From NCBI GenBank assembly GCA_028826165.1, contig JAPDFW010000110.1, positions 1 to 64,000 of the forward strand: a DNA stretch of 64,000 bases, written 5' to 3'. A model generated the notes under the pieces. The model had not been told where the DNA came from. It was given only the letters and a program-made list of their open reading frames with translations, and ran no database searches. Every line of letters starts with the position of its first letter. Within the stretch, counting starts at the first letter, position 1. A program made the position numbers and the translations under genes. The DNA is from Anaeramoeba ignava BMAN (lineage: Eukaryota > Protista > Anaeramoebae). This document shows, piece by piece, positions 27,707 through 59,589 of this stretch.

Positions 27707-29514
27707 ATGAAAAAATCAAAATTTAAAAAACAAATTCCTTTTTATTCTCCAGTTGCTCAACAAATTAACGATTCAAATAAAATGAAAAAAAATTCACAAC
27801 TTAAAAAATTGATTGAAATTCATCCAAAAAGATTTGATTTTATTGATGATCTCATGAAATTACAACAAAAACAAACTCAAAATCAAATTCAAAATAAATT
27901 TGAAAATCAATTTCAATTTCAATTTCAATTTCAAAACCAATTTGAAAATCAAAATTTAAAACAAAATCAAAATCAAAATCAAAACCAATTTGAAAATCAA
28001 AATTTAAAACAAAATCAAACTCAAAATCAAACTCAAAATCAAAATCAAAACCAAAATCAAAATCAAAACCAAAATCAAAATCAAAATTTAAATCAAAATC
28101 AAAATCAAAATCAAAATCAAAATCAAAATCAAAATCAAAATCAAAATCAAAATCAAAATCAAAATCAAAATCAAATTTGAAAATATAAATCAAAATAAAT
28201 ATCAAAATCAAAATCAAAATCAATTTCAAAATCAAAATCAAAATCAAAATCAAAATCAAAATCAAAATCAAAATCAAAATCAAAATCAAAAAATCAAAAT
28301 CAATTCAAAATCAAAATCAATTCCAAAATCAAAATCAAAATCAAAATCAAAATCAAAATCAATTGAAAAATCAATTCCAAAATCAATTTGAAAATGAAAA
28401 TCAATTCCAAAATCAATTCGAAATTCAAATTCAAAATTTCAATAAAATTCAATCAATAGAAATTCTTGAAAAAAATTACAAATTAATTTGTTATCATTTA
28501 ATCAATTTATTGAATTTAGAAGAAAAACATAATCCAAAAAATTTCAACCATTACAAAAATAAAGAATTAAAGATTTATCGAGCAAAAATCATTTCAGAAA
28601 TTTCAGAATTATGCTTTTCATTAGGATTTTTACAAGAAACATTCTTTACTTCAATAAATTGTCTTGATAGTTTCATTTCAAAGAATCAAAAAACAAACTC
28701 ATGGAAACCAAGTTTATTAGCAATAACTTGTGTGTTAATAGCAGCAAAATTTCAAGAAGATTATCCAATTAAAATTTTGAAGTTGATTCAAGGAAAAAAT
28801 ATTTTAGAAATTAGTGTTCGTCAAATCAAACAAATGGAAAGAACCATTTTAGATTCAATCAATTTCTCAATCAATAGAGTAACTTTGAATTCTTTTGTTC
28901 TTGTTTATTTGAGTAGAGCTCGACTGTTTCAATATTATTTGGAATACAAAATGAATCAAAAAATAAATGATTTTTCCAAAATAATGGAAAATATTAAACA
29001 AGAAGAAACAAATGAATCTTCAAATCAATTCCAAAATGCATTTCTTTGCAAAAATATCAAGAATAATGATTCATCCACAAATATAAATATGATCCAAAAT
29101 TTAAAACCAAACGGACATTCATTAATCCAATCAAAAACAAATTTTGATTTCAAACAAAATTCAAAAATTCTTTTAGAAAACCCAATGAAAATTTATAACG
29201 ATATGATACGATTAATCAATATTGCAATCATTGATTCGGATTCATGTCAGTTTAGTTCAAGTGTAATTGCTAGTTCAACTTTATTATTATTTTGTCCTCA
29301 AATTTTACACATTTCATTAATTACTGGCTATTCTTCTCAACAACTTGAAAAATGTAAAAATTGGATTTCTCAATTTATTCCTTTTATTACAACAACTTTG
29401 GATGAAATGATTGAAATTGAAGAAAAAGAAAGATATGAAAATTATAGATTTCTTCATTTGTATAATATTTTCACTTCAGAATTCACATCTAAATATTGTG
29501 AGAAATATTTGTAG
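27707..29514 (+). CDS. Cyclin, most similar to cyclin E type; NQ-repeat N-terminus broken by indels
   Basis: Cyclin box RAKIISEISELC...QETFFTSINCLDSF...LLAITCVLIAAKFQEDYP...QMERTIL; C-terminal ITGYSSQQLEKCKNWISQF. Confidence 0.88.
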
Positions 29515-33921: not shown

Positions 33922-36900
33922 TTAATTAAAAATATTTGAGCAAAATTGATAAACATGAGAAATGTTTCCTAATAAAATTTCTTCATCATTATCAAAATTT
34001 TCTTCAATTTCTTTATAAATAATTGTTGTTTTATCTTTAATTGAAAAAAGAAATAATTTTCTAAATGAATTATTATTATTATTATTATTAATATTCAAAT
34101 TTCCTTTAAGTTTCTTAATAAAATCTTTCAAAACACAAATAAAATCAAATATTGGGATTTTTTTTGTAATTTTTTCTAATGAATTTTCCAATAATGAAAT
34201 TTGGAAAGAAGTCATTTCCCATTTGAATTTTTTATCAAGATTTTCCAAAATATTTTCAAAATTATCTTTAAATTGTTTATGAATAAATAAAAGATGTTTC
34301 ATTTTAGCAAATTGTTTAAATTTTGATAAATCATTTTCAATATCTTCCAAATTTTTAAATTCAAATTTAAATTGAAATTCAAGTTTTGTTTTAATAAATT
34401 CTATTATTGATAAATCTTTTAATTTTGAAAATTTATTTTCATTTTTAATATTTTGACATCCCAAAATTATATATTCAATAAGTTTTTCAAAAGTTTCAAA
34501 CAAATTATTCTTTTCTAATTCTTCTTTAATTTGTTTCCATTGATCATGATTTAATTCTTCTTGTTCCCATTTTTTTTCTGTTTCAAGAAATTCTTTTTTA
34601 ATTTCAATTTGTTTTCCATAATAATTAAAATTTTCAATTTCAATTTTGAAAATATTTGTTTCTTTTAAATAATTTAATTTTTTTCTAATAAATTCTTCAA
34701 TATAATCTAATTCTTGAATTAAATTATTATAATTTATAAATTCTTGAAATTCTTGAATATTAAATTTGATAATTTTAATAAAATCTGAATTTAATATTTT
34801 TGGGAAATGAAGAATTGATTCTTTAAATTCTTGATTATTTTCATTATTTTGATTTTCATTATTTTCATTATTTTGATTATGTTGTGAATCTTGGAAAATA
34901 GATTTTAGAAATGGAGATTTAATTAATTCATTATGTAGATTAATTGAATGTTCAATTAATATTGGAATCATTAAATTATAATTTTCTTTTCCTGTTAAAC
35001 AAAAATCAATTATATCTTCTTTTTTAATTTCATCTTTGAAATTATCATCATTAATTTCTTTTGTAATTTGTAAATATTTAATTTCTTTTGAACTTAATTT
35101 CCAAAATTTTTCAAATTGTAAATATAATTTATTGATTATTGGATTGTTTTCTGTTTCAATAAATTTTTGAATTTGAATTACTTTTGCTTCTTTTTTTGAA
35201 ATTTTTCCATTCATTTTTTTCATTATTAAACTTGTAAATTTAATAAATCCTTCAAATAAATTTAATATTTCTAATTTTGAATAATTTTCAATTATAAATT
35301 TAATTAATGGATATTTTTCAAAATCTTCTTCTTTTTTTTGAATGTATAAATTAATAATTGGATATAAATTTGGTTTTGATAAATCAAATAAATTTATTTT
35401 TGTTTTGGATTGTTGTAATTTTTTGTTGATTTTATATTTTCTTTTAATATTTGAAATTATTTTTTCATGATTTTCTTTAAAAATATCAGAAAATATTTCT
35501 TCCAATTTATTTCTTTTTTCAACTTCTTTGAAATTATCTTTTCTTAATAAAAAATTTGGAATTCTCTTTTTGGAAAATAATTTTAATGTTTCATAATAAT
35601 AAAGTATTGATTGATAATTTGTAAGATTTGTTAATTTGGATATAATAAATAAATCATTTCCAATATGAGAAATTAATTGTTTGATTAATTCTTTTTGATT
35701 TTTTGGTTTAAAAACACAATTATTAATCATTGAAATGAAATGATTTGAAAATTTTTCACAAATAATTGAAAAAGGAAGAATTGATGAATGAATTAATAAT
35801 CTAATAATTCTAAAAGTTATTGGATGTAAATTTCGATATGTTAATAATGGATTTGAATTTGGTATTTTAGAAACTGAATAAGATAAAACATTTTCAAAAA
35901 ATTTTGAATTAATTTCATTTTCTTTTAAACTTGATTTACAAAATTCACACCAATTTTGTAATTTAATATTAGAAGATTTCACAAAATTTAAATGTTTATT
36001 TTCACATAATTTCCAATAACCTTTTTCTTTTTCAAATTCTTGTTGAAATGGATGTGATCCCATTGATAAAAAATATAATTTTTCAAGCATTTCTTGTTTT
36101 AATTGTGATTCTCCAACTTCAAATAAAAGATCAGATGAAAATAAAAATTGAAATGGTTCAAGTTTTATATTATCAATAAATTCAACACTTTGGATTATCA
36201 TTTTGAAAATTTCTTTGTTTTCAATTTCTTTTTCAATTTCCCAAAATTTTCGATAAAATTGTGAAATAATATAACTTATTTTATGTTCTGAAACAAATGA
36301 AATATGTGAATATTCGAATTTTAATGATAAATCATTTTCAATTTCTTTTTGTTCATAATAATATAATAATGATTGATCTTTGTTCTTTTTTGGATATTCT
36401 ATTATTATTGAATCATTTCTTTTTGAATTTAAAACATTTTGAGAAATTTCTAGTTTTTTAATTTTATCAGGAATTTCTTTTTCAATAAACTTTTGAAGAT
36501 AATTTCTTCCTTTATCATTTTCAATTTCATTAAAAATAAATTTAATCCATATTTCTCCACTTTTTTTTGAAAAACTATTTTTAAATTTTTGTATTATTTT
36601 TTTTGGATTTCGAAGTAACATTTTTCTTTTTTCAATAAATTTAATAATATTTTGAATTGAGAATTGATTTTTAGAAATTGCAGTTATTATATTTTTTTCT
36701 TTCAAATTTGGTTTTGATTCTTTCTTTAAATTAGGTGAATCTTGATTTTTAAAGAGATTTTGTTGAATAGATTTAATATTGTTTCTTATTTCTTCATTTT
36801 CATTAATAATTTTTATACAAGAAATAAGAATAATATTTTCTGGTTTGTTTTCTAATATTTCTTGATTTGTATTTTCCAAAAATTTATCAATAAAATTAAT

Positions 36901-39900
36901 AATTTCTTTATTATCTTCATTTGAATTTTCGTTTTGAATAAATGAAAGTAAATTTTTAAGTATTGGATAAAAAATTGAATAAATATTTTCAATTTGTTTA
37001 ACTTTTAAAAATATTTCAATTTTTTCTATTGAATAATTTAAAAATTTTTGAATAAATCCAAAATTAAATTTTTTTGTTAATTTTTTCTTGAATAAAAATT
37101 GTTGAAAAATTATTCTTCCATAAAATGTTAAATATTTTGAAAATTTATGGAAAATATTTATAATTTCTTTTCTATATTCTTCAATTTTACTTTTTCTAAT
37201 TGTTCTGAAATGTTTTGTATCATTTTCTTCAATTTCTTCTTCACAAATTGAACATTTTTCATTACTTTTCAAACATAAATAAATTGGTTTTTTTTCTTTT
37301 TGAGATTTTTACAAATTTTGATTTTTATAATTGATATTTTCTGAAAATAATTCTTCAATTAATTCATTTGTTATTTTATTAATCATTAATTCATTTTCAA
37401 TTTTTGATAATTATATTTTTCTCGTGTTTTTGATTTAATTGTTTTAATTGAATTGAAAATTGTTTTTGAAATGTTTGAATAATCCATTCATTATAAAGTT
37501 TTTCAATTTCTTCTTTTTCTTTTTGTTTTTGTTTTATTTCAATCCAAAATTCAAATAATTCTTCAATATTATCATTTTGAATTATTTCTTCTTTATCTTC
37601 TTTTATTTTTTCAATCAATTCTCTTATAAATAATAAAAATGAAAATCTTTTTCTCTTCTCATTTTTTCTTTTTGTTTTAAAATTAATTAATTTGGAAATA
37701 AAAAGTAAATTAATTAATTTTTGATGAATTTTTTCAAAATAAATTTGTTGAATTTTTTGAAATGAAATTGTTTTTATTTTTTCATTGGATTGTTGTGAAT
37801 AATAATTGTTGATAATTCTTCTTAAATTAATTTTTAATTTTTGGAAAATATTTTTTTGTTCTGGATTAAGAACCAATTTGATAAAATCTTTTAAATATTT
37901 TTGAATAATTTCATCATTAAAAGATGAATCAATAAATGTAATAATTTTGTTTTGTTGAGAAATTGTTTCATTTTGTTGAATTATTGAATAAATTATTGAT
38001 GAAAATGGGAATTCTTGTTTAATTGTTTTTGTTTTGTAAATTGGATAACAAGGAATTTCAAATTGTTGAAATATAACATCCCAAATTTCTTTCATTTTTT
38101 CATCTTTTGAATTTAATAAAATTGTTAAATTTTCATTTTGATTTATATTTTGGAAAAATATATCAAAAATTTCAATTAAATCTTCTTTAACTTTATCAAA
38201 TAAAATACTTATAAATTTCTTTTTCTCTTTCTTTTGTTTGAAATTATGTAAAATATCAAAAATTTCCCATTTAAAATTTTCATGTTTTGATTTAATTGAT
38301 AATTCAATCATTTTTCTAATTTTTTGGAAAATTTGTTTTTCATTTCTTCATTCTTAAAAAGGTTTTTTTCAATTAATTCTTTTTCTTTTTTGAAATTTTC
38401 ATTTGTTAAATCTTTTTCTTTTGAAAGAATTATTCCTAAATTTTCTATTATTATTTTTTCTATTTGTTTGTTTTTTTGTAAATAATCAAATGATTCTAAA
38501 AGATTTTGAGGTAAATTTTTAAGATTAAATAATGTTTCAATTTCTTCAATATAATAATGTTCCCAATTTTTTTCAAAATAAAAAGGAAATGATTTAGAAT
38601 TTGAAGTGAAAGATAAATGAATAAATAATATAATATAAGAGTTCTCTATTCTGTTTTGATTATTATTATTGTTTTGAGAAATTATTTGTTCAATTAAAAT
38701 TTTAATTTGATAAAATAATTCAATTTGATTTTGTTTGAAATGAATAATTAAAATATTTTTTTCTTTTGGAATATTGGAAATTAATTCTTCATTTTCTTTT
38801 TTGATAATTTTATCTTTGTTTTGTAAATCTAAAATTTTAAATGAATATTCTGAATATTTTTCTTCAATTTTCCCAATTTCTCTTTTATATCCTCTTGTGA
38901 AAATTATTGATTTTTTCACTTTATTTTTTAAAATTTCTTCATTTAAAAGTTCTTCAAAATTATTGTAAATAGATGAAAAATATTCTTCTTTAATTTGATT
39001 AACTTTTTGAATTTGTTTTTCTTTTTGTTTTTTTGATAATAATTCTTTAATTTCAATCATTTTTTCAAATTTAAAAAATTGAATAATTTTCTTTTTGATT
39101 TTTTCTTCTTGATCTTTTTCATTTTGATATTTAAGAATAAGTGAAGGAAATAAGTTTTGATTAAATTCAATAATTAAATCTTCTTTTTTAATTTTGTTTT
39201 CAGTAAATTTTTTGATTGGATTGAATATTTTGAATATTTTGGATATTGATTCTTTTGGAATATTAAAAGAAGAAATATCAATTAAATGTTTTTCAAATTG
39301 ATTTAATAAATTAGGTTGATTAAATTCATATTTAATTGCTTTTGTTGTTATAATTATTAATCTGAAATTTGGATTCATTTCAATTTTTCTTATTTCATTT
39401 TCAAAAATAATTGTTATATAAAATTTTTCATTTTCTTTAATATAATTTTGATTAAATAAATCATCTAATAATGGATAAATTTTTTGATAATCAAGAAGAA
39501 TTAACATTTTTCCTTCATAAATACATTTTTCAATAATATTTAATGCTTTATTAATTTCTTGATTTTTCTTTTTCTATTTGTGATTCTGATTTTATTAATG
39601 AATTTGAATCAAATAAAATGATTGAATTTCTTGAAAAATATTGTAAAATTATTGAAAAAATTGAAATATTTGGAATAAATATCATTAAATGTCTTGATGT
39701 TTTTATAAAATCTGAATATTTTTGAATTTCATTTTCTTTTGTTAATTTTTGAATATTTTCTTTTATTGATTGAAATGGATTGAATTTTGGAAGTTTTTCA
39801 AATCCTTCAATTTTACTATTTTTCAAAATTTGATTTAATATTTTTGATTTAATTCCAAAATTTCTAAAAAGAGATTCATAACAAATATCTAAAATTCCTT

Positions 39901-42900
39901 TTTTCTTTTGTTCATTTCCATAATAAAATCCAATATTATTAAGGAAATATTGATAATCTTTAATTCCATAAAAATTTAATGGTGGTTGATTTTCTTGAAG
40001 AATTGTTTTAAATTGTTTTGAAATTATTTCATTTTGATTTTGATAAATTTTAGAAAATAATTCAACAAAAATATTAGGATAATTTCTTCGTATTTTTTTA
40101 GAGAATGATTTTATAATTTCTTTTGTTACAATTTCTAATTGATTTCGATTTAAATTTAATAATAAATTTCTTGAAGTTAATCCTGAAATTTCAAAATTTG
40201 TATTTATATTTGTTAATAAAATCAATGTAAATTTTGAATTTGAATTTGAATTATAAATCATTTTATTCATAATTTTTTTGATTTTTGAATGAATCATAAT
40301 TAAATTTTCTTTTGATAAATTTGTGAAATTTTTTAAAATTATTATTGGAATGTTTTGTTGTTGTTTTTGTTTTTTGATGTTTTGAAATTGATTTTGAAGA
40401 TATTCTTGTGTAAATATTTGTGAACATTGAATTTTAAATCGTTTTATTTGTGGAAGTTTCCATTGTTTTAAAATTTGATTTTCATTTTTAGAAGATGAAA
40501 ATGAATTGAAAATAGATTGAAAAGATTTTTTTGAAATTGCTATTTTTGTTTTAAATAAAAATAAAATAAAAATAAAATTTAATAATTATTTTGTTATTGT
40601 TATTGTTTTTGTTATTAATTTACCTAAATTATCAATTATTAATAAAGGTATTTGTGTAAAAAATGAAATAAATATTGATAAAATATTTTCATTAAAATTT
40701 TGATTTTGGAAAAGATTTGTTTGGGTTAAATTAAATTGAATTGATTGAATTAAACTTTTTGTTAATTTATCAATAATTTCTTTAATTTTTATTTTTCTAA
40801 ATCTTTTTTAAAATTTCCACTTATTTTAATCTTTTTGAAATTTTCTTCAACTTTTAATAAAAATTTATCTTTTTCTTCTCCAATAAAATATGATCCATAA
40901 ACAACAAATAAAGATAATAGCATACTTTCTCTAAATATAATTCGATTTGTATTTGATGGATAATTCAATTTTTTGCAAATTTCTTTTTCAATTAACCATT
41001 GGAAAATATTGAGAAATATGAAAACATCTTGTAATGATTGAATAGAATAATTTGTTTTGTTTTGTTGTTGAATATAATTTCTTGAAAAATTAATTGTTTC
41101 TAAAATAATTTGAATAATTTTTTCTTTATCAATATTAATTAAATTTTTTGGAAATTTTTGGTAAATCATTGAAAAAATATAATTATTTTCTCCTTTTTCG
41201 CTTAAATTCCCAAAATCATAAATATCTTCAAAAAATGAATCAGGAATTAATTGAGGTTTTGAAATTATTTCTTCAATTATATTTGATTCATTTGATTCAT
41301 TTGGTTTGATTTGAGAAGAATATTTTTTTGATTGAAATGATTTGATTGAAGCTAATAAATTAATTTCATAGGGTAAATTTAATAAATCAAAAGATCGATC
41401 TATTAAAATTTTCTTTAATAAAATTATGCATTCTTTTGATCCTGTATTGAAATCATTGAATAAAATATTAATTTTTGAATTTGGTTTTTCTTTAATAATA
41501 TTTTCAGCTTTTTCAATAATTTGTTCAATATCTTTTTTGTTTGTTTTAGAATTGATATTTAAAATTATTAATTTTTGTTTTAAGATTTCTTCTAATAAAT
41601 AATGAATTAATAAATTTTTCTCATAATCATTTCCTTCAATAAAAATAACTGGAAGTTTTGCTATTAATCTATAATGAATATTGATTAATTTCATTAGGTT
41701 ATTTGAAGTGATAAATTTTGGATAATCTTTTATATCTTGTTTTGAATTAAAAGAATTGAGAATTTTCAAAATCATTTCTTTTTCAATTTCAATTTTCTCT
41801 TCATCATTTTGGAAATTTTCATAAATTTTAATCAATACATTATTGTTTAAAAATTTTTCTAATTTTTGATTAAATAATGATTTGATTTGATTATTGCTTA
41901 TAATTATCATTTCAAGTTGTTCTTCATTTTTGAGTTGATTTAAAAAAATTGGGAAAGTGAAAAATTTTTGATTCCAATCAATTCTATCTTTTAATAAATT
42001 TGAGAAATCTTCAAATTCATTTGTTTCTAATTTTTCTATTTTTGTACTCCATTTAAGATAACGTGAAGAAATATTAACAATAGAATCTAAATAAAATGAA
42101 AATAAATGTGAAATAAATTTTTCATAAATTTCTTCATTTTCTTCTTTTAATAATCCTAATAATAATAATTTATTTGAATCCAAAAATTGACAATTTTGTA
42201 ATAAAATTATTTGTGATTTTAAAATTGAACAAATAATAAATATTATTCTGAAAGTTAAAGGTTGGCCTGGTAATTTTTGTAAGATTTTCTTTTCAATTAA
42301 ATTAAAGAATTCTTTTTTATCTGGTTCTTGATTAATAAATTCTTTTCTTTTTTCAATTTGAAGATTTTTGAATTGTTTGAAATTATTATTACTTAATTCA
42401 ATTAATTTAGCAACATTTTTCAATTTTTTATCTTCAATTTTTTCAATTATAAAATTTGGATTTAATTTAAATTTAATAAATGAAAATTCATCATAATTAA
42501 CTTGACATTCTTTTTCTTGAAAATATTTTAATGATTGGAAATTATTTAATCCATTTTCTGAATTTTCTTTTCTATTACTTGGAATTTCAAAAGCTAAAAA
42601 ACAATTATTTAAATCTTCTTGATTAAAATCGAAAATGAAATTTGATGATTTTTCTCTTTTGTTTTCAAATAAATTCCACATTGTAAATCCCCAAATAAAA
42701 TCTAAAGTTTCTAAATTAGGTGAAAAAGGTAATTCAATATGAAAAAATTTCTTTTCTTTTTGTTTATCTTTAATAAAATCATTTGATATTTCTTTTGATA
42801 AAATGATATTGAAATATAGATAATTTTCTTTTTGATATTTTTCATTATATTTTTTGTGAATTTGATAAGTTTTTCCCATTCCACTAATTTTAGAAGTAAA

Positions 42901-45900
42901 TAATTGTATTTTTGGATAAAGTTTGTGATATTTTTTGTAAATTTGTGTTATTTTTTTTTTGGAAAGAATTTTGATTTTGTTTGTTATTAAACATTTTGGA
43001 AATTGATTAACAATTCTAAAACTTCCAATTTTCTCTTCATAAAAGAAAATTAATAATGGGAAATGAATTGTGAAAGAAATATTTTGAATTTTTTCAGTTA
43101 ATACTTTTAAACATTCTTGAGATAATTTATGTGAATGAATAATTGAAAATAAATATTTGTTTTTTGGAATATTTTCATATTTTTCATTATAAATTTGATA
43201 AATATTAAAGAAATTGTTAATATCATTTTTTGTTGAATTTGAATCACAAAATAATACATTTTCTTTTAAAGGGAAATGATTACAATATCCTAAATATAAA
43301 CTTGTAACAATTTCATAAATTTCTTTTTCTTTTTCTAATTTATAAAAGAAAAATTTTTGATTTTGATTTTGATTTTGATTATCAAAAATTTGATTAAATT
43401 GAGAATTTGATTTTTTTAAAATATTTTCATCAATTTTGATTATTCTTTGTTTGATTGAATTTTTGATAGGAATTAATTTTTCTAATTTATTAATAAATGT
43501 TTTGAAAAAATTTGAATCAATTTTAATTTGAGAAATTTGAATTTTGAAATTTTTAAATTCTTCATTTTTTAAATTTGGTTTAAATGATTTAAGAAGAGAT
43601 AATGAATTATTGTTTTTGTTTTCAAAATGAAATTCTTTTATAATTGAAAAGATTTGTTCTTTTGAGAAAATTGAAAGAATAAATTGAATATTATTATTGT
43701 TATTATTATTATTGATAAATTCTGAAAATAAATCATCAAGTTGTTTTGTAAAATTTCTTTCTTCTTCAGTTTCTTTTTCTTTTTGTAATAAAATTAATTC
43801 TTCAATTTTTTTAAAAATTTTCTCTAATTTTTTTTGTGAAGGATTTATTTTTTGATAAATTTTGATAATAATTTCAAATATATCATTAAATGATTTGAAA
43901 AGTTTTTCATTATATAAATATTCTTTAAATTCTTCTCTTAAATTTTGTAAATATTTTTTGGTTTGTTTTAAATTATTGTTATTGATTTTATCAAAAATTT
44001 CTTTAAATTCTTTATCATTTTTTAATTTTTGTAAAATTTGAATTGATTGATGAAGTAATTCAAAATTATATTTCTTATTCAATGTACTACCAATAAATTT
44101 ATAAATTTCTTGAAATATTTGACTAATTTTTGATAAATCTTTCATTTCTTTTTCATTTTTCAAATTTGGATTAAAAAAATTAGAATAAAATTCATTTTCA
44201 TATTTAAATAATGGAACAACTAAAATAAACCAATAAGGAATTTTGGAATAATTTTTTCTGTCTTCTTGATATTTTAAAATTGGAGAACAAATTTGTTTAA
44301 TTTTTTTATCTTTAGGAATATTGGAAATTTCAAATAATAATTTAATTTCATTTTCTAATAATTCTTTTTTCTTTTCATTTTCATTTTCTTTTTCTAATAA
44401 TTCTTTTGTCTTTTCATTTTCAATTATTTTTAAGAATAAATTTTCAAATTGTTTGATTTTCATTTTTTGATTTGAAATTAATTTTGTTTTTTTTATCAAA
44501 TCATCTTGAATTTGTTTAATTTTATTTTGTAAATCTTCAAATGAAATTTTCTTTTTTTCATTTATTAATGATTGTTGATATTCATTCCAATAAATCTTTT
44601 GAAAAATTTGAGTTTGTTTCATTTTATAAAAATTTTGGATAATTTCTTCTTTAATTTTCAAATTTTGAATTGATTTTTTAATTTCATTAATTGATTTATC
44701 ACTTTCAAATAAATCCAACATTTCTTTAATTTTTAAAATATCTTCTTCAATTAAAATTGAATATAATTCTTTTGATAAGAAGTTTTTTTGTTGATTTAAT
44801 TGTTCAAATTCATTCTTTTAAAATTTGGAAATTTGGTTTTTCGAATATAACCCAAATTTTTGAATTTTCATAATTTTGAATAATAATTTCAGAAAGTTCT
44901 TTATAAGAAAAATTTAAATTTTTTGATTTTTCAATAAAATTTTCAATTTCTTTTTGATATTTTTTAATTGATTCAAGAAATTCAAATTTTGAAATTGTTT
45001 CATTTTCAATTTCTTTTATAAATAATAAAGCATCTATCCAATTATTTTGTTCTTTTTCTGAAAGTGAATTAAAGAATTGAAAGAAATTTTGAGAATTAGT
45101 TGGTAATTTGTTTCCAATATAAGGTTTCCATGATTCAGTTTGTATTTCTAAGGGAATTTTTTGAATAATATTTTTTTCTTTAATAATATCTTCTTTGGAG
45201 ATTTTATCATAATTTTCTTTAACAAATTTTTCAATTAAATTCTTTATAAATTCATCAATTTGATTTATTTTATCAAGTATTTTTGATTCAATAATTATAT
45301 TTAAACGTTCTTTTTCGTTTTTGTTTGTAAAATATGGTTGAGTTTTTAAATTATTATAAATTAATTCTTGAATATTTGAAATTTCCATTTTATTTTGATT
45401 TTTATTTTGATTTTGATTTTGATTTTGATTTTGATTTTGATTTTGATTTTGATTTTGATTTTGATTTTGATTTTGGGTTCCTTTTTAATTTGGATTTTTT
45501 TTTGAATTTGATTTTGATTTTCATTTTCATTTTGATTTTGATTTTGATTTTGATTTTGATTTTGATTTTGATTTTGATTTTGATTTTGATTTTGATTTTG
45601 ATTTTGATTTTGATTTTGATTTTGATTTTGATTTTGATTTTGATTTTGATTTTGATTTTGATTTTGATTTTGATTTTGATTTTGATTTTGATTTTGATTT
45701 TGATTTTGATTTTGAGAAATAAAATCTTTGCTTTTCTTGTAAAAAATAGTCCAATTATCTATCCAATTCCCTAAATTTTCTGTTTTGTAATTTATAATAA
45801 TCTTAAAAAAGAAATTATTTAATTTTCTTGAAAAAAGTTGAATAAAAAATTTGCTTGGTTCATTTCCTGTAAATTCATTGAAAAAAAGATGAGTTAATTG

Positions 45901-47058
45901 ATCACCATTTTGATAATAATTTGTTTGGAAAAGTAAAGTTGTAGTTTCAATAAAGTCTTCAATATTTTGATGATTAAATAAAAATTGTTGAATTTCATGA
46001 TATATTTCTTCTGGTTTAATATTTGAAAATACTTGGAAATCTTCAATTTGTTTTGATTTTTGACAAAAAAAATCAAATAAGAAGAATAATTTCATTTCAA
46101 ATTCTTTTTCAGAAAAAAGAAAATCAACTAAAATATTCCTTAAATCTTCAATATGTGGTTCTTTTTGTATTAATATAAATGATTGAATTTCTTTTTCAAT
46201 TGGTTTAAAAGAAATTTTTGAGATATTTTGGAATACTTCTTTCTTCAAAATATTATCCTGAATAAATTTTATGAGATAAAAAAATGGAATTAAAAAAATA
46301 AATGGAATGCACACTTTTTGATCTTTTTGGAATTGAATTGAAACTTTTTTAATTAAAGTTGGAACAACTTCTCCAAATTTAATATTTTCATTCACATTTG
46401 TTTGTAAATCTGTAATCTCTTTTTCAATTTCTTTAGTTCTTTCAATTTCTTTCTTTTTCTTTTTCTTTTTCTTTTCTAACTTTTCTTTTTCCTGTTTTAA
46501 TTGTTCAATTTTTTTTTTCGTTTCTAAATCAAATTTAAAAATATTGTTATTTTGAAATATCTGAATTGCTTGACAAAAAATAAGAAAGTTTTTTTTCAAG
46601 TTTGAAATATCTTTTGAATTATCTTTGAAATGTGACTCATGAAATTCATTTTGAATTATTTCTTGAATAATAATTTGACAAATTTCACCATCAGAATATT
46701 CTTCTCTTAAATTTTGATCAATGAAAAAAATAAAAATGTGTTCTTCTTTTTCTTGATTTTTAAATGAAATTTTAATTTTGGATTTTTTTCCAGGAATTAA
46801 ACGAGATGTAATAAAGCATTCTTTATTTTTTTGTTTTTCAACGTTTTTAAATTGTTTTTTGGAATAAAAAATTGTTAAATTTTCTTGATCTTTTTCATTT
46901 TCATTTTGAAAACTTTTTTTGATTAAATTTATTTGTTCGCCAAGTAAAAAAGAAACTAATTTATCATTTTTATTTTTATTTTGTGAATTTGGTTCATAAA
47001 AAAAAGTTGCATAAATATAAAAAGTTTTAAATTGGTTTTTGTTATTTTTTAAACTCAT
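33922..47058 (-). CDS. RNF213/mysterin-like giant (~4,300 aa): dynein-like AAA+ core plus degenerate E3 module; seven track ORFs = one gene
   Basis: Collinear RNF213-like motifs: ENVLFCDSNST, FTSKISGMGKTYQI, FITSNNLMKLINIHYRLIAKLPVIF, LFNDFNT, IYDFGNLSEKGENNYI, SLQDVFIFLNIFQW, ENILSIFISFFTQIPLLI, KIQCSQ, FYGIKDY, LFRNFG, LDDLFNQNY, LLNQFEKHLI, WKLCENKH..CEFC, RNLHPITFRIIRLLIH. One GT-AG intron ~40540-40623; ATG 47058. Confidence 0.88.
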
Positions 47059-47262: not shown

Positions 47263-50200
47263 ATGAATTTACAAACAAAAAACAAAAAGCAACAAAAGAA
47301 AAATAATCAAAAAATAAGAAGAACAATTCCACCAAATTCAATAGGAAAAATAAAAGGATATTTTATAATTCAAATCCATTCAATTTTATTAAAAAATCAA
47401 AATGAAAAAATTCTCATTTCAATTCAATTTCCTGAAGAAATAAAACCAATTATTATTAAAATTAATCAACAAAATTATTCTATTAAATATGAAATTACAA
47501 CTTCAATGCTTAATCTATGTAAATATTTTTCTAGTTTCCAAAAATTATTGATCAAAATTTACAAAGAAAAATTGGATAATTTTTTTGCAAGAATTTTTGT
47601 TAATTTTAATAATTTGTTACTCTTAAATAATCAACCTCAAAATTTCACTATTTCTAATTTAAATAACAAAAAAATTGGAAATATTAAATTATCTTTGAAA
47701 ATTATTCATTTAGAATTTGGTGATATTTTAGATTTCAAAGAAGAGAAAATTTCAAGAAATATTTCCAATCAAAAAATTAATCAAGAAATTCAAAATAATT
47801 CCAATCAAGAAATTTCAAGAAATATTTCTAATCAAGAAATTCAAAATGATTCAAATCAAAAAATTCAAAATAATTCAAATCAAAAAATTAATCAAGAAAT
47901 TCAAAATAATTCAAATCAAAAAATTAATCAAAAAATTCAAAATAATTCTAATCAAGAAATTTCAAGAAATATTTCCAATCAAGAAATTCAAAATATTTCA
48001 AATCAAAAAATTAATCAAGAAATTCAAAATAATTCAAATCAAAATATTTTTAATCAAAAAATTCAAAATAATTCAAATCAAGAAATTCAAAATAATTCAA
48101 ATCAAGAAATTCAAAATAATTCAAATCAAGAAATTCAAAATAATTCAAATCAAAATAATTCTAATCAAAATATTTCTAATCAAAATAATTCTAATCAAAA
48201 TAATTCAAATCAAAATAATTCAAATCAAGAAAGCAAAATAATTGCTAATCATAATTCACACATTTTAATTATTCAAGTTCAAGATTTACAAATTTCTTAT
48301 CATTTTAAACAATATTTCCAACATAGTTATCAAGAAAAACAAGAAATTCAAATTGAAATTTCTATTTCAAATTTAAACAATGAGAACAAACAAACCCAAA
48401 TTTATTCAAATCAAAAATTAAATTCTTTATTGGAAAAAACATTTTTTCCTAATAATGCTTATAATAACCATATTATTCATTCAAATAATAAGAATATTTT
48501 TCTCGTCAACAACAAAAATTTACTTGTTAAATTTTTTCTTTATTCTTTTATCAACAAAACAAAATCCAAAAAATTATTTGGAATTGGGAAATTATTTTTA
48601 GAAATTGAAAACAACTTTGAAAAACAATTTATAATCAAAATTTTACCAGTTAATCAATTCAAACAATTTTTGGAAATTGGAAACTTAAAAACTTTAATCC
48701 AAACAACACATAAATTATTCACAAATGAACCAACAAAAAATTATCCAAAAAATGAGATCAAAAAAGAAGAAGTTTTATTATTTCTTTCAGCAAGAGAAGT
48801 TCAAGATTTAATCCCAAGAACAAAAGGATTGAGAAATTTATTTTTAATTATCAAATTTGATTTAATTCAAAAAAATATTCAATCATTAATTACTTGGGGG
48901 AAATTTAATCAAGGTTATGATTTAAATTTTAATTATAAGTTCCATATTAATTCAACTCAAATTCATTCAAATCAAAAAAACAAACAAAATCAAATTGAGA
49001 TTAACATTTATGATCTTCATAAACAAGAAATGCAAAAAGAATATCTTGGAACAATTTTAATTCCTTTAGATTTATCAAAAATATTTCAAGAAATTGATTC
49101 CTCTCAAAAACAAAGAGAAGAAAATTATTTTGAAATTTTAGATAATTTTTTTGAATTTATTCATCCTTTCACAAATGAAATTTATGGGAAATTGAAAATT
49201 ATTTTATCCCTTTCATTTCCTAAATCAATTCAAACAAAAGAATTAAATAATTTAAATTTAGAAGAAGATAAAAAACAATCAATTTTAACAAAAGAATTAA
49301 ATAATCTAAATTTAGAAGAAGATAAAAAACAATCAATTCAAACAAAAGAATTAAATAATTTAAATTTAGAAGAAGATAAAAAACATTTAATTCTAACAAA
49401 AGAATTAAATAATTTAAATTTAGAAGAAGATAAAAAACATTCAATTTTAACAAAAGAATTAAATAATTTAAATTTAGAAGAAGATAAAAAACATTTAATT
49501 CAAACAAAAGAATTAAATAATTTAAATTTAGAAAAAGATAAAAAACATTCAATTCAAACAAAAGAATTAAATAATTTAAATTTAGAAAAAGATAAAAAAC
49601 AATCAATTCAAACAAAAAAATTAAATAATTTAAATTTAGAAGAAGATAAAAAACATTTAATTCAAACAAAAGAATTAAATAATTTAAATTTAGAAAAAGA
49701 TAAAAAACATTCAATTCAAACAAAAGAATTAAATAATTTAAATTTAGAAGAAGATAAAAAACATTCAATTCAATCAATGGAAAAAATAATAGGATTACAA
49801 TTAAGTTCCACAAATTTAAATTTTCAAAATCCATTTCAAAATCAATTTCAAAATCAATTTGAAAATCAATTTAAAAATCAAATTCAAAATCAAAATCAAA
49901 TTCAAAATCAAATTCAAAATCCATTTGAAAATCAATTTCAAAATCAATTTGAAAATCAAATTCAAAATCAATTTGAAAATCAAAATCAAATTCAAAATCC
50001 ATTTGAAAATCAATTTGAAAATCAATTTGAAAATCAAAATCAAAATCAATTTAAAAATCAATTTGAAAATCAAATTCAAAATCAATTTGAAAATCAAATT
50101 CAAAATCAATTTGAAAATCAATTTGAAAATCAATTTGAAAATCAATTTGAAAATCAATTTGAAAATCAATTTGAAAATCAATTTGAAAATCAATTTAAAA

Positions 50201-50859
50201 ATCAATTTGAAAATCAAAATCAAAATCAATTTGAAAATCAAAATCAAAATCAATTTGAAAATCAATTTAAAAATCAATTTGAAAATCAAAATCAAAATCA
50301 ATTTGAAAATCAAAATCAAAATCAAAATCAAAATCAATTTGAAAATCAAATTCAAAATCAATTTGAAAATCAAATTCAATCTATTCTTTTCAATTCTTTT
50401 TGTGAAGAAACTCAAATTCATATTTTAATTGAATCTATTCATAATCTTCCCCAATCCTCAAATCAAGAACTTTCAATTTTCATCGAATTTCAAAATATAA
50501 TTTACACAACATTTTTAAACAAAAATTTAACAATTCCTTATCAAAATCAAAATCAAAATCAAAATCAAAATCAAAATTCAAATCAAAATCAAAATTCAAA
50601 TCTAAATTTAAATCAAACTCAAAATCAAAATTTAATAATGAAAGTTCTTTTTTTCAATCAAAAATTTCAAAAAGAAAAAAAACCTTTTGCTCAATCTTTA
50701 ATTGATTTATCTCCTTTGTTTTCTGGTTTATCTTTAATTGATTCTTGGTATCATATTTTTGATTTAAAAGAAAATAATTTTAATAACAAAATTTTAGCTC
50801 AAATTAAATTGAGAATTCATTTACAAAAATTTTCTCATTTCCAAATTTTATCAAAATAA
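47263..50859 (+). CDS. C2CD3: C2CD3-like multi-C2-domain centriolar protein
   Basis: N-terminal [21 protein letters not shown]...[16 protein letters not shown] resembles the C2CD3 N-terminal C2 domain; C-terminal [25 protein letters not shown]...AQIKLRI resembles C2CD3 VDLSPLLSG...GWYNITD...GQIKV. Confidence 0.72.
49224..49775 (+). repeat. Coding 54-bp tandem repeat x~10 ([18 protein letters not shown])
   Basis: 18-aa period visible in the translation. Confidence 0.92.
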
Positions 50860-55336: not shown

Positions 55337-58300
55337 TCATTTCTCCTCTAAAAAATTTATTAACTTCTCATGAACTTTTGCGAAAATTTGCAAAGGATCA
55401 AATTTACGAATCAATTCTCTTCTTTTCTTTTCCAATTCTTCTTTCTTTTTCTCCAAATCAAGTTCAGTCAAAACAATAGAAACTTGAGTGATTTGTTTAT
55501 TTGCATTTGAATTAGAATCATTTTTTTTTTTTTGATTTCCAGAACGATTAGAATCAACAACTTGGTTCGGCAAATTTGAATTAAAATTTGAATAAGAATC
55601 ATTTGGTTTTTGGATGAGCAAGAATTCGTCATTTAAAGCAGACATTTTATTAAGATTCCCTTTTGTTTCAACTACAAAATCCTTGACAAATTTTTTTTCT
55701 AAGTCGACTCTTCTCGACAAAATACTGTCTGCAATTTCGATCGAAAAATCAACTGAAGAAGACATTATACTTTCCAAATTAACTTTTATTTGCTCCTTTA
55801 AACAAGTGGCAAAGGCAGTGACATTGACAAGCGGCTGCATATAGCTGTCAAGTGAACTTTGTCTAACGTATTTAAGAAAAAACTCTCTTATCAAATCAAG
55901 ATCACTTAGAATAAGATCTCTTGTTGCTGGACTCAAATTTTTGTTTCCAGTCGCCATTCGAAAAATATACCAAACGCTGATTTCTTCAAGTAAAAAATTG
56001 CAGATCTTCTTGAGAGAAAATTCCCAAATGTGATTATAAAGATCTTCAAAATAATCCTCAAGTGTGCCAATAACAAGAAGCATGACTTGATTGTCTGCTT
56101 GAGAGAACCAGTGATCACTGAAAAACAGATCAAATGCTGATTGAAGATCCATCAGAATGATCTTTGCTATTTTGCTTGTTGAAATCATTGAGATTTCATG
56201 GAATCCATCTGCAACAATTTCTGGATCCAAATAACTCATCCCGGCAACGGAATTTGGGGACACCCGAATAGCCTCAATTCTCTCAATTGGGAACTTTTCT
56301 TCATCATCCGAATTGATTACTCTTGCCGCGTATTCTGGATCTAAAAGACCCAGCAATTCTTGTTTCCATGTGTTTGTATACTCAACACAATTATATGAAT
56401 CATTGACAACTGCGCAAAGATATCCAAAAGGAAGCTCCTGGAATCCTCCTCAATTAGTTGTCTTTGTTCCATTTGAAATTCCCGAAGCATATATGCGCAG
56501 GAAAGTGCTATTTCAAACAAGAATTTCCCGTTTTCTGATACATCAAGTGCTGTTTGCATTTGTTGAGATATTGTTTTGAATAGATCAAGTGGTGTTGGTG
56601 TTGAATATATTGGGTTGTCTTCAATATCGTTGAGCTCTCTGTCTACACTCAAAATATTCAGGAACCAACTTTTCATTTTTGACTAATTTTTGAAAAATTT
56701 TGGAAAAATCATTTTGACATTTTTTTTTTTTTTTGGGAAATTTGATTTTTGTTTTGATTTTTTCTTAAAAATTTTTTTCAAACCTGCATATGATGATGAA
56801 ACCTATCAGTTAAATCTCCAAGTCTTTCTATTAATTTTGGTTTTGTTTGTCGAATTCCAAAACGAAGTAAGAATTTATTATATGTTTTGATCCAAGATAC
56901 TTTAATTTTATGAAACAAATAATTAAACAATTAAAGAATTAACTAAAAAATTTTTTTTTCTTAAATTAAATCCAACCTAAAGTCAATATCTCTTCAATTT
57001 CAATATCAGGACGAGATGAGAAGATATGAAACTTCTCAAAAACTTTTAAATGATAAGCAACTGAACATTCAAATACAATATTATATTTTTTTGGAAGAAG
57101 TGGTTCCACATAATCTTTAAAATCATCCAATTCTTCCAGAAGATCTAATATTTTTTCTAATGATTCTCCAATACTTTCAATATCTCCAAATTCTTGTTCA
57201 AATCTCGCATAAATTCTTTCTTGAATTTTGTGAATAAATTCTTCTCTGAAACTTTTAATTTCCAAAATTTCTAAAACCAATTTAAATCAAACCAATTTAA
57301 ATCAAATTAAATCAATAAAAAATTTTGAATTTATACTATTTTCCATTGAGTCTTCAATTTCTAGAATCATTACTGATGTTTTTATTAGCATAGGATTTTC
57401 CTAAATATTTTAAATATTCCAAAAATTTGTATTGATTTTTTCAATTGATTTCAGGATTTTTTTGATTTACTCTTGAAAGTTGAAGAATATTTTCTGCAAT
57501 TTTCCAAATTTGATTAAAAAAAGCATCACAAAGTTTTTGAATTTCATTGAACCAAAAAAATAGCATATTTGAATCTTTTTCTGTATCATTTATAAAATCT
57601 ATTGCATTTTGATTTTCATTCTTTTCTTCTTTTTGAATTTCATTTAAGCAATCAAGCCTTAAAATCATTAATTCTCGAATTTTTTCATAATTTTCAAATA
57701 GTAATCTTTCATTATTTAAATGTGCTTCTATTTTTCTCACTTCATCTCTTATTAAAAATAACTTTCTTAATTGAATTAGTGTATTTCTCATATTTCTTCC
57801 TACCATACTTAATATTCTAATTTCACTATAATTTGGAATTAATCCTTTTTAATTTTATAAATAAATTTTAGAATAAATTTTTAAATAAATTTTTAAATAA
57901 ATTTTTAAATAAATTTTTAAATAAATTTATAAATAATTTTATAAATAATTTTTAAAATAAATTTATAAATAATTTTTGAAATAAATTTTCAAATAAATTT
58001 TTAAATAAATTTATAAATAATTTTATAAATAAATTTTGTAATAAATTTATAAATAATTTTTGAAATAAATTTATAAATAAATTTTTGAAATAAATTTTTA
58101 AATAAATTTTTGAAATAAATTTTGAAATAATTTCAAATAAATTTATAAATAATTTTATAAATAAATTTTTAAATAAATTTTGAAATAAATTTTGAAATAA
58201 ATTTATAAATAAATTTTGAAATAAATTTATAAATAAATTTATAAATAATTTTTGAAATAAATTTTGAAATAAATTTTGAAATAAATTTTCAAAATAAATT

Positions 58301-59531
58301 TTTAAATAATTTTTATAAATAATTTTATAAATAAATTTTTAAAATAAATTTTTTAAATAAATTTTTAAATAAATTTTTAAATAAATTTTAAATAAATTTG
58401 AAATAAATTTAAAAATAAATTTATAAATAAAATTTTTAAATAAATTTATAAAATAAATTTTAAATAAATTTTGAAATAAATTTTAAATAAATTTTGAATA
58501 AATTTATAAATAAATTTTAAATAAATTTGAAATAAAATTTTGAAATAAATTTTGAAATAAGTTTTGAAATAAATTTTAAAATAAATTTATAAATAAATTT
58601 TTAAATAAATTTATAAATAAATTTTAAATAAATTTATAAATAAATTTTGAAATAAATTTTGAAATAAATTTTAAATAAATTTTGAAATAAATTTTAAATA
58701 AATTTTTGAAATAAGTTTTGAAATAAATTTTAAATAATTTTTAAAATAAATTTTTGAAATAAATTTTAAAAAATTTTTAAATTTTTATTAAATAAATTTT
58801 AATAAATAAATTTATAAATAAATTTTTAAATAAATTTTTAAATAAATTTTGAAATAAATTTATAAATAAATTTATAAATAAATTTTTAAATAAATTTATG
58901 AAATAAATTTTTAAATAAATTTATAAATAAATTTTTAAATTTTTTTAAATAAATTAATAAATAAATTTTAAATTTTAAATAAATTTTAAATAAATTTATA
59001 TAAATTTATAAATAAATTTTTAAATAAATTTTTTAAATTTTTCTTTTAAATTTAAAAATGAAAAATGAAAAATAAAAAATGAAAAATAAATTTAAAAATA
59101 AATTTTATAATAAATTTTTATTAATAATTTTAATAAATTTTTTAAAATAAATTTTTTTAAATAAATTTTGAAATAAATTTTGAAATAATTTCAAATAAAT
59201 TTTTGAAATAAATTTTGAAATAAATTTTTAAATAATTTTTAAAATAAGTTTTTTGAAAATTAAAACCTTGATTTTGATTAGATAAATTTTTAATAGATTT
59301 AAAATGTTCATGAATGCTTTTAACAGTTTTGTCAGAAACTTGAAGTAAATCAGCTCCTTTTTGAGCAGAATTTATTTGACTTTGCATCATTGCTTGTAAT
59401 TTACTATCAATTTCTGCTTTTACTTTTTCTGTTTGTTCTTTTAATTCATGAATTTTTCTTAAATCTGTTGGATGTGCAATTTCTACTCCAATTCTATTTT
59501 TAGCTTCTTTTTTAGCTTTTTCTTTTGACAT
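55337..59531 (-). CDS. SEC6: Exocyst complex component 3 (Sec6), 6 exons
   Basis: HPTDLRKI...KAEIDSKLQAMMQSQI, YSEIRILSMVGRNMRNTL, EILTLVSWIKTY, MKSWFLNIL, TPTPLDLFKTISQQM, IGTLEDYFEDL. GT-AG introns incl. 57845-59266 are phase-consistent; indel near 56440. Confidence 0.88.
57845..59266 (-). repeat. 1,422-bp Sec6 intron 1 filled with an ~11-12-bp AAATAAATTTT(A/G) repeat
   Basis: CAAG|GTTTTA donor and TTAAAAAG|GA acceptor bracket the repeat. Confidence 0.88.
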
Positions 59532-59589
59532 AAAAATGAAAAAAATGAAAAATGAAAAATGAAAATGAAAAATGAAAAATGAAAATTTT

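What the first reader, a model, noticed from the sequence alone, without database searches (positions are those of the whole stretch)
33922..47058. Full-length RNF213/mysterin-like giant in a protist that looks like a pseudo-enzyme
Seen: about 13.1 kb of nearly continuous coding sequence with RNF213-like motifs in the correct order. The AAA2-type P-loop SGMGKT (~42868-42886) is intact. The AAA3 Walker A/B positions read IFIEGNDYEKN and ILFNDFNT (~41440-41660), versus IMGETGCGKT and FFDEANT in RNF213. The AAA4 positions read IPLLIIDNLAISK and IIILKNF (~40325-40660), versus IPLFLVGKPGSSKS and VVLDEVG. Established: in mammalian RNF213, AAA3/AAA4 are the hydrolytic sites, AAA2 is a nucleotide-binding site, and the protein coats intracellular bacteria and ubiquitylates them. 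Inference: this is a hydrolysis-dead scaffold, decoy or regulator of an RNF213-type cell-autonomous antibacterial system. That would be notable in a bacterivorous or symbiont-hosting protist. The frame has no convincing in-frame nonsense codons apart from indel breaks, which argues against simple decay.
Basis: partly seen in the sequence, partly recalled or inferred. Interest (0 to 1): 0.85.

Follow-up and report, generated by a model that had tools for sequence, protein, structure and literature searches.

The report
Catalytically dead RNF213-like giant gene
This 13 kb gene of the symbiont-hosting anaerobic amoeba Anaeramoeba ignava is a true relative of the human antibacterial giant RNF213. 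It has lost the ATP-binding and ubiquitin-transfer residues yet still looks protected by selection, and it is one of at least 75 RNF213-like places in this small genome.

Summary
Window 33922-47058 (minus strand) encodes a roughly 4,300-residue protein collinear with an intact 4,182-aa paralogue, which matches solved RNF213 at E=3e-95. A profile built only from the window's own clade also matches RNF213 (E=3e-36). It places EGNDYEKN / LFNDFNT on the AAA3 Walker A/B motifs and DNL|AISKK / IILKNF on those of AAA4. The AAA2 P-loop (GMGKT) is kept. The RZ finger keeps its CHCC zinc ligands but has Ser at the catalytic Cys.

The organism is Anaeramoeba ignava, which has at least 75 RNF213-like places. 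The dead-AAA3 genes form one well-supported, deeply branched clade that includes a full-length, transcribed member.

The window copy is one of at least five copies that are 96-98% identical. Between copies, nonsense changes are almost absent (0 seen against 33 expected), and missense changes are nearly neutral (omega 0.67-0.85). The eight or more frame breaks are private 1-4 nt indels in A-runs. Their number per copy does not track substitutions, and the assembly is Nanopore R9 with light Pilon polishing.

Best reading: a fast-evolving pseudo-enzyme gene, not simple decay. A recently decayed pseudogene remains possible. Other first-stage notes flagged sister copies elsewhere in this genome.

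The parts
33922..47058 (-). Whole RNF213-like gene (about 4,300 codons), read as 8 ORF pieces plus one intron
   Evidence: ORF map; collinear tblastn to intact paralogue C70; ATG and stop positions
45361..47058 (-). N-terminal piece with long NQ / KI low-complexity repeats. Its frame register drifts inside the repeat.
40789..44721 (-). 1,310-codon open piece holding AAA2 and AAA3
   Evidence: direct phmmer hits to 4,300-5,300-aa giants; Foldseek top 8 hits are all RNF213
42868..42885 (-). AAA2 P-loop SGMGKT, intact. GxGK[TS] is kept in every paralogue read.
41614..41646 (-). AAA3 Walker A position: IFIEGNDYEKN in place of GETGCGKT
41443..41466 (-). AAA3 Walker B position: ILFNDFNT in place of FFDE(F/A)NT
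40625..40651 (-). First half of the AAA4 Walker A position, IPLLIIDNL (GKPG lost)
40540..40623 (-). 84-nt GT..AG intron (phase 1) that splits the AAA4 P-loop. Paralogue C93 has an intron at the same position.
40517..40539 (-). Second half of the AAA4 Walker A position, (A)ISKKSFQ
40325..40345 (-). AAA4 Walker B position: IIILKNF in place of VVLDEVG
35929..36015 (-). Degenerate RZ finger, WKLCENKH...CEFC. The CHCC zinc ligands are kept, position 11 (the catalytic Cys) is Ser, and one residue is deleted before CxxC.
   Evidence: residue roles from bioRxiv 10.1101/2021.05.10.443411; no Pfam ZnF_RZ hit
44810..44820 (-). Frame break (window +1 nt relative to C138), in an A-run
40789..40800 (-). Frame break: window has A5 where C138, C4, C61 and C59 all have A6
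39551..39570 (-). Frame break (window +1 nt relative to C138)
38308..38340 (-). Frame break (window -1 nt relative to C138)
37305..37435 (-). Patch of four window-private deletions (4, 1, 2 and 1 nt). C138 reads through here as part of one 1,835-codon ORF.
33922..37272 (-). 1,116-codon C-terminal piece (E3-module equivalent)

Best explanation
The locus is a member of an Anaeramoeba ignava-specific subfamily of RNF213-like giant proteins that are pseudo-enzymes. The six-AAA core fold and the structural AAA2 ATP site are kept. AAA3 and AAA4 can no longer bind or hydrolyse ATP: in AAA3 the P-loop glycines and the Ser/Thr are lost, and although a Lys still aligns at the Walker lysine, acidic residues now fill the loop. 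In AAA4 a Lys is likewise kept but the glycines and Ser/Thr are gone, and the Walker B Asp-Glu is replaced in both modules. The RZ finger keeps its zinc ligands but has no nucleophilic Cys. Such a protein cannot perform the ATP-gated, RZ-dependent ubiquitin transfer of canonical RNF213. Inferred, not shown: it acts as a non-catalytic partner of the many canonical RNF213 paralogues in the same genome, as a co-assembling regulator, adaptor or decoy on the structures they coat. The window copy is one of at least five 96-98% identical copies that evolve fast at the amino-acid level while their reading frames are preserved. Its frame breaks are most probably uncorrected Nanopore homopolymer errors.
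For: Family: intact paralogue against RNF213, E=3e-95; RZ Pfam 5.5e-17; window collinear with it. The window's 831 aa directly hit 4,300-5,300-aa giants, including a choanoflagellate and a jakobid protein. The dead-clade-only profile hits RNF213 at E=3e-36, motif on motif. The Foldseek top 8 hits are all RNF213.

Dead motifs. Almost every non-Anaeramoeba relative keeps the AAA3 Walker A lysine and the Walker B DE. Ahel et al. show that Walker A mutants of AAA3 or AAA4 abolish E3 activity and that Cys4462 is the nucleophile.

Selection: the dead-AAA3 rows form one clade (100/100) with internal branches of 0.5-1.1 changes per site. The clade includes a 3,846-aa annotated protein whose transcript is in EukProt. 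Window against C138: 339 codon substitutions, 0 nonsense against 33 expected, P about 1e-13. Five copies: 1 real stop against 12 expected. 3n indels outnumber non-3n indels in exons, about 21 to 14.

Frame breaks as artefacts: all are private and lie in A-runs. Private non-3n indels per copy are 2, 2, 4, 6 and 18, against private substitutions of 29, 24, 88, 31 and 35. The assembly is R9 Nanopore with Racon, Nanopolish and two rounds of Pilon at mindepth 5. A conserved neurobeachin-like gene in the same window also carries a 2-nt frameshift in an (AT)5 run.
Against: Eight or more frame breaks in 13 kb is far more than in single-copy paralogues of similar homopolymer load, which have zero breaks in ORFs of 8-12 kb. 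Uniform assembly error therefore does not explain them; one must assume worse polishing in this 17% GC, multi-copy sequence. Missense evolution among the young copies is close to neutral (omega 0.85 pairwise, 0.67 on private changes). A real pseudogene of the same cluster exists: C35 has 10 stops and large deletions. GenBank annotates the window gene and C138 only as fragments. The decoy or regulator role is pure inference.
Confidence: 0.6

Rival explanations
1. This copy is a recently dead pseudogene of the dead-motif subfamily. The frameshifts are real slippage mutations in A-runs, accumulated after a redundant young duplicate lost constraint.
For: Eight or more frame breaks are present. Single-copy paralogues in the same assembly have unbroken ORFs of 2,800-4,182 codons. 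Omega is near 1. The 17% GC content equals that of non-coding DNA. The sister copy C35 is clearly decayed. In very AT-rich genomes, indel mutation in repeats can outpace substitutions (general knowledge).
Against: No nonsense change is seen in the window or in C138, C4 or C61, against 33 expected pairwise and 12 expected among private changes. Indel load is uncoupled from substitution load across copies. At every window break the other copies keep the frame. 3n indels are enriched in exons.
Confidence: 0.3
2. The frameshifts are real, but an intact protein is still made through transcriptional slippage or programmed ribosomal frameshifting at A-runs.
For: The breaks lie in or next to A5-A8 runs. 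ORF preservation against nonsense would fit a gene that is still translated. One transcript-derived ORF of a sister paralogue departs from the genomic frame right after a poly-K tract.
Against: The breaks are private to each copy and go in both directions (+1, -1, -2, -4), which argues against any dedicated signal. Assembly error is a simpler explanation. There are no RNA data.
Confidence: 0.04
3. It is a working ATPase and E3 whose catalytic residues sit at other positions, so the motif alignment is wrong.
For: Overall divergence from RNF213 is large. phmmer of the window pieces alone finds no PDB hit.
Against: The profile alignment puts the dead strings exactly on the Walker motifs, flanked by conserved residues: PVI..G....K..LI.YL, F..FN, IPL..(I/V)G. 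There is no other GxxxxGK[ST] in the AAA3/AAA4 region. There is no Cys at or near the RZ nucleophile position.
Confidence: 0.02

Closest known systems
RNF213 / mysterin (human, mouse; PDB 6TAX, 7OIK, 8S24, 9G08)
   Same: Giant single chain with an N-terminal arm, a dynein-like six-AAA core and a C-terminal E3 module with an RZ finger. AAA2 keeps a P-loop. The whole AAA3 to AAA5 region is alignable, and Foldseek ranks RNF213 first.
   Different: The Walker A and B motifs of both regulatory/hydrolytic modules (AAA3, AAA4) are replaced. The RZ nucleophile Cys is Ser. Pfam detects no RING or RZ domain. The protein is about 900 residues shorter. It is multi-copy rather than a single gene.
Canonical RNF213-like paralogues of Anaeramoeba ignava (C70 4,182 aa; GenBank KAJ5067471.1, 4,503 aa)
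   Same: Same genome and same architecture, 30-32% identity over AAA2-AAA3, and sister lineages in the tree.
   Different: They keep GETGCGKT, FFDEFNT, GKPGSSKS, ILDEV and a full RZ finger. Their GC content is 23-32% against 17% here.
Degenerate AAA modules inside dynein, midasin and RNF213 itself (AAA1/5/6 of RNF213; AAA5/6 of dynein)
   Same: The AAA fold is kept as a structural ring element after loss of nucleotide binding.
   Different: There, at least one module stays active. Here both modules that are active in RNF213 are lost, along with the ligase nucleophile, in a separate paralogue.
RNF213 expansion in chemosymbiotic deep-sea bivalves (BMC Biol 2023, PMC9993606)
   Same: Copy-number expansion of RNF213 in a host that houses bacterial symbionts.
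   Different: That is an animal lineage, and the passages retrieved mention no catalytically dead subfamily. Here the host is a metamonad protist, with at least 75 places in 42.8 Mb.

Membership tests
RNF213 family (homology) | Significant sequence similarity to RNF213 across the AAA core | tested here: met
   The window pieces alone give no PDB hit. The window's 831 aa do hit 4,300-5,300-aa RNF213-like giants directly, E down to 4e-10. The dead-clade-only profile hits RNF213 at E=3e-36. Paralogue C70 hits at E=3e-95.
RNF213 family (homology) | Collinear giant architecture: N-arm, AAA2-AAA3-AAA4 and onwards, then the E3 module with an RZ finger | tested here: met
   tblastn of C70 residues 864-4095 matches window 43344-34213 in order. 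Motifs occur in the expected order.
RNF213 family (homology) | Fold of the AAA core resembles solved RNF213 | tested here: inconclusive
   The Foldseek top 8 hits are all RNF213 (E 3e-16 to 5e-14), ahead of dynein (about 1e-8). However, the model has mean pLDDT 54.7 and TM scores below 0.2. Only the AAA3 part (residues 530-650) is confident.
Active RNF213-type enzyme | Walker A (GxxGxGKT) and Walker B (hhhhDE) in AAA3 | tested here: not met
   EGNDYEKN and LFNDFNT stand at the aligned positions.
Active RNF213-type enzyme | Walker A (GKPGSSKS) and Walker B (hhhhDE) in AAA4 | tested here: not met
   DNL|AISKK and IILKNF stand at the aligned positions.
Active RNF213-type enzyme | RZ finger with CHCC zinc ligands plus the conserved nucleophile Cys (mouse C4462) | tested here: not met
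   CHCC is present, but Ser stands at the nucleophile position. Pfam ZnF_RZ is not detected, even at E<=1.
Active RNF213-type enzyme | RING domain | tested here: inconclusive
   No Pfam RING hit in the C-terminal piece. Only a CSIC...H remnant is seen at 37234-37254. The canonical paralogue's RING region did not align to RNF213 by phmmer either.
Pseudo-enzyme (functional, non-catalytic homologue) | Catalytic residues lost but the gene is maintained by selection | tested here: met
   This is met at clade level. The dead-AAA3 clade is monophyletic, old, and includes a 3,846-aa member. Among the young copies, nonsense changes are depleted: 0 against 33 expected, and 1 against 12 expected.
Pseudo-enzyme (functional, non-catalytic homologue) | This copy is expressed and has an intact frame in vivo | not testable with these tools
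No independent assembly or transcript of this copy is in the protein collections. A transcript exists only for a sister dead-clade gene.
Processed or unitary pseudogene | Frame disruptions together with nonsense codons, and omega near 1 | tested here: inconclusive
   Frame disruptions are present in the assembly and omega is 0.67-0.85. Nonsense codons are absent. The intron is retained, so the gene is not processed.

The most novel reading that the evidence does not exclude
Anaeramoeba ignava keeps its sulfate-reducing symbionts in symbiosomes. It may run a large RNF213-based cell-autonomous system in which a lineage-specific, rapidly diversifying, multi-copy clade of catalytically dead RNF213 paralogues acts as decoys or dominant modulators of the canonical ligases. 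These could, for example, shield symbionts from ubiquitin coating or trap bacterial effectors that target RNF213. That would be a protist analogue of the decoy or pseudo-enzyme layers in plant and animal immunity.
Probability: 0.15. Interest if true: 0.85.

Novelty: new variant of a known kind. Interest (0 to 1): 0.6.

Why it matters
RNF213 is known as a vertebrate interferon-induced ligase that coats cytosolic bacteria. Its deep evolutionary history and any non-catalytic relatives are barely described.

Here a free-living, symbiont-bearing metamonad devotes roughly 2% of a 42.8 Mb genome to at least 75 RNF213-like places. One clade has switched off both regulatory ATP sites and the ligase nucleophile while keeping the fold, the AAA2 site and the reading frame.

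If these proteins are made, they are natural 'Walker A dead plus Cys dead' variants, the same states that biochemists engineer to dissect RNF213. They also offer a handle on how a host tunes an antibacterial coating system while tolerating resident bacteria.

In the paper library searched, no paper linked Anaeramoeba with RNF213. Only automatic GenBank product names do.

Tried and rejected
- **Direct searches on the window pieces.** Pfam on all seven pieces gave nothing above threshold. phmmer of the two largest pieces against PDB gave only chance-level FAN1 hits or nothing. Homology had to be shown through paralogues and profiles.
- **Counting stops with tblastn.** This was misleading, because alignments ran on in the wrong frame through low-complexity sequence. 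I replaced it with nucleotide alignments read in the homologous frame.
- **C59 as a heavily decayed copy.** The first genome search suggested this (49% identity, 54 stops). At nucleotide level it is 97.8% identical, with 23 small indels and one stop, so I rejected the 'old pseudogene' reading for it.
- **Uniform assembly error.** Rejected as the full explanation. Single-copy paralogues with 6-7 homopolymers of 6 or more bases per kb have unbroken ORFs of 8-12 kb.
- **Haplotig or allele explanation for C138.** Rejected, because homology stops at the gene borders.
- **Telomeric position of the window.** No telomere-like repeat at the window start.
- **Independent Illumina-based contigs or transcripts of this copy.** None were found in the protein collections.
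- **Census of all paralogue motifs.** Only about 14 loci plus the annotated proteins were scored.
- **Steps not taken.** The spliced and frame-joined protein model was never assembled or submitted; all searches were exon by exon, by reference.
Full report
**What is there.** The minus strand of window 33922-47058 carries a string of long ORFs (609, 192, 1310, 248, 399, 304 and 1116 codons) at 17% G+C. One break is a real 84-nt GT..AG intron at 40540-40623, which splits a codon inside the AAA4 P-loop. Every other junction is a change of frame with no intron signals.

**Is it RNF213-like?** Taken alone, the window pieces match no Pfam family, and the two largest match no solved structure by phmmer.

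- A six-frame search of the window's own genome found dozens of paralogous places.
- One of them, on contig C70, is a single uninterrupted ORF of 4,182 codons. It matches human and mouse RNF213 chains at E=3e-95 over the AAA3 to AAA5 region. It also matches at E=7e-16 over the RZ finger and the following domain. It carries Pfam AAA_5 and ZnF_RZ, the latter at 5.5e-17.
- The window gene is collinear with residues 864-4095 of that protein.
- The window's own 831 residues, searched by phmmer against 1.84 billion representatives, directly hit proteins of 4,300-5,300 residues at their positions around 1,900-2,300. These include a choanoflagellate protein and a jakobid protein.
- A profile built only from the window's clade hits RNF213 at E=3e-36.
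- An AlphaFold model of the AAA2-AAA3 part is poor overall (pLDDT 54.7) but confident in AAA3. Its eight best Foldseek matches are all RNF213, ahead of dyneins.

Family membership by descent is therefore secure.

**The motifs.** In the clade-only profile alignment and the paralogue alignments, the window reads as follows.

| Site | Canonical | Window |
|---|---|---|
| AAA2 P-loop | GxGK[TS] | GMGKT (kept in every paralogue read) |
| AAA3 Walker A | GETGCGKT | EGNDYEKN |
| AAA3 Walker B | FFDEFNT | LFNDFNT |
| AAA4 Walker A | GKPGSSKS | DNL\|AISKK |
| AAA4 Walker B | VILDEV | IILKNF |

- The RZ finger keeps the four zinc ligands (C, H, CxxC). It has Ser where the strictly conserved nucleophile Cys stands (mouse C4462), and Pfam no longer recognises it.
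- According to Ahel et al. (bioRxiv 10.1101/2021.05.10.443411), Walker A mutants of AAA3 or AAA4 almost abolish E3 activity, and C4462 accepts ubiquitin. This protein therefore lacks every residue known to be needed for RNF213 catalysis.
- Among 131 relatives found worldwide, almost every non-Anaeramoeba protein keeps the AAA3 Walker A lysine and Walker B DE, with occasional conservative variants. Only A. ignava proteins show the dead AAA3.

**Organism and family.** Protein hits carry GenBank names from Anaeramoeba ignava, several of them 'E3 ubiquitin-protein ligase rnf213'.

- A. ignava is an anaerobic metamonad that houses Desulfobacteraceae in symbiosomes. Its genome is 80.65% A+T (PMC11550330).
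- The two genome searches together give 75 distinct RNF213-like places on 45 contigs, a lower bound. Ten of them lie within 6 kb of a contig start.
- No paper in the library holds both 'Anaeramoeba' and 'RNF213', and the genome paper's supplements do not mention RNF213.
- RNF213 expansion has been noted in chemosymbiotic bivalves (PMC9993606).

**The dead state is old and maintained.**

- In a maximum-likelihood tree of the AAA2-AAA3 region, all dead-AAA3 sequences form one clade (100/100). This clade sits inside the A. ignava expansion and has internal branches of 0.5-1.1 changes per site.
- The clade contains a full-length annotated protein of 3,846 residues (KAJ5069738.1). This protein still has an AAA4 Walker A (GRPGNSKT) but has KE in place of DE, and no RZ nucleophile. 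A transcriptome ORF from EukProt matches it at 97%.
- The replacement string at the AAA3 P-loop, G-N-[DE]-Y-E-K, is itself conserved between sub-clades that are only 45% identical overall.
- The window's cluster has gone one step further and has also lost the AAA4 P-loop.

**Pseudogene or pseudo-enzyme for this copy?** The window gene has at least four sister copies, on C138, C4, C61 and C59, at 96-98% nucleotide identity. It also has a more distant copy on C35. Homology to C138 ends at the gene borders.

- *Window against C138, whole gene.* There are 339 codon substitutions and dN/dS is 0.85. The synonymous-to-missense ratio equals the neutral expectation. No nonsense change is seen, where a spectrum-matched neutral model expects 33 (P about 1e-13).
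- *Five copies.* One real stop is seen against 12 expected among private changes, and missense omega is 0.67.
- *Indels in exons.* 3n indels outnumber non-3n indels, about 21 to 14. The 84-nt intron alone holds three non-3n indels.
- *Frame breaks.* Every frame break in the window is private. At each one C138 reads through (for example as one 1,835-codon ORF), as do C4, C61 and C59 where they were read. C138 in turn has its own private breaks elsewhere. Most of the breaks are length changes in A-runs.
- *Indel load against substitution load.* Private non-3n indels per copy are 2, 2, 4, 6 and 18. Private substitutions are 29, 24, 88, 31 and 35. The two do not track each other, which is not what neutral decay on a clock would give.
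- *A true pseudogene for contrast.* The C35 copy has 10 in-frame stops and many large deletions.
- *Assembly method.* The assembly was made from R9.4/R9.5 Nanopore reads (ABruijn, Racon, Nanopolish) with two rounds of Pilon at --mindepth 5. A conserved neurobeachin-like gene in the same window also carries a 2-nt frameshift in an (AT)5 run.

The simplest reading of all this is that the frames are open in vivo and the breaks are unpolished homopolymer errors in very AT-rich, multi-copy sequence.

*Evidence on the other side.* Single-copy paralogues with comparable homopolymer density have unbroken ORFs of 8-12 kb, so the error rate would have to be locally elevated. Amino-acid evolution among the young copies is close to neutral. 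I therefore give about 0.6 to 'intact, fast-evolving pseudo-enzyme gene' and about 0.3 to 'recently decayed copy of a pseudo-enzyme subfamily'.

**How it would work.**

- *Shown.* The protein keeps the RNF213 fold and the AAA2 site, and lacks the AAA3/AAA4 nucleotide sites and the ligase nucleophile.
- *Inferred from RNF213 biochemistry.* It cannot be switched on by ATP and cannot form the ubiquitin thioester.
- *Inferred further.* In a cell with dozens of canonical paralogues, it would act by binding the same targets or partners as a regulator, adaptor or decoy. Near-neutral missense evolution, preserved frames and recent copy gain would fit an arms-race or tolerance role towards bacteria. 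None of this is tested.

**Limits.**

- The spliced and frame-joined model was not built or submitted. Every search used single exons or ORF pieces by reference.
- Other first-stage notes of this scan describe sister RNF213-like genes elsewhere in this genome. None had been followed up.

Noticed in passing
window 2218-7574 (minus), break near 4370-4385: A neurobeachin/BEACH-type gene (Pfam Neurobeachin, DUF4704) is split into overlapping ORFs by a 2-nt excess in an (AT)5 run, inside the conserved '..IYIDG..' motif. This is probably an assembly error in a conserved gene. It is useful as a gauge of assembly quality.
   Followed up: partly
G000, 45 contigs: There are at least 75 distinct RNF213-like places in a 42.8 Mb genome. 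Ten lie within 6 kb of a contig start, and the C138 copy sits 1-2 kb from a contig end. The family therefore tends to break the assembly, and it may be clustered or lie near chromosome ends.
   Followed up: partly
L006 = G000:C59:250014-255359: This copy is 97.8% identical to the window but has 23 small non-3n indels and only one stop in 3.9 kb. It looks like an unpolished stretch of Nanopore consensus rather than an old pseudogene.
   Followed up: yes
L005 = G000:C35:106990-111714: This copy of the same cluster is 83% identical. It has 10 in-frame stops and many 30-95-nt deletions, so it is a genuine decayed pseudogene.
   Followed up: yes
L008 / L009 = G000:C64:420467-426031 and C127:107579-113143: This is a second pair of dead-AAA3 paralogues, 99.1% identical. 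C127 is open for 1,409 codons. C64 has three small frame-breaking indels within 300 nt.
   Followed up: partly
P0012 against P0136: A transcriptome ORF of a dead-clade paralogue is identical to the genomic protein up to a poly-K tract and then departs in frame. This is either a poly-A length disagreement between RNA and genome assemblies, or slippage.
   Followed up: no
window 47263-50859 (plus): This divergently oriented neighbour starts about 200 nt from the RNF213-like ATG. It has a C2CD3-type N-terminal C2 domain followed by very long NQ-rich and '[14 protein letters not shown]' tandem repeats, also at 17.6% GC.
   Followed up: no
window 9543-11144 (minus), 20381-21733 (plus): A RING-finger gene and an F-box/SAP gene lie in the same window. 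Also present are a GDA1/CD39 nucleoside phosphatase (18618-20273), a cyclin (28363-29514) and a Sec6 fragment (55337-56356).
   Followed up: no
window 58000-64000: G+C falls to 7-11%, which suggests satellite or extreme low-complexity DNA.
   Followed up: no
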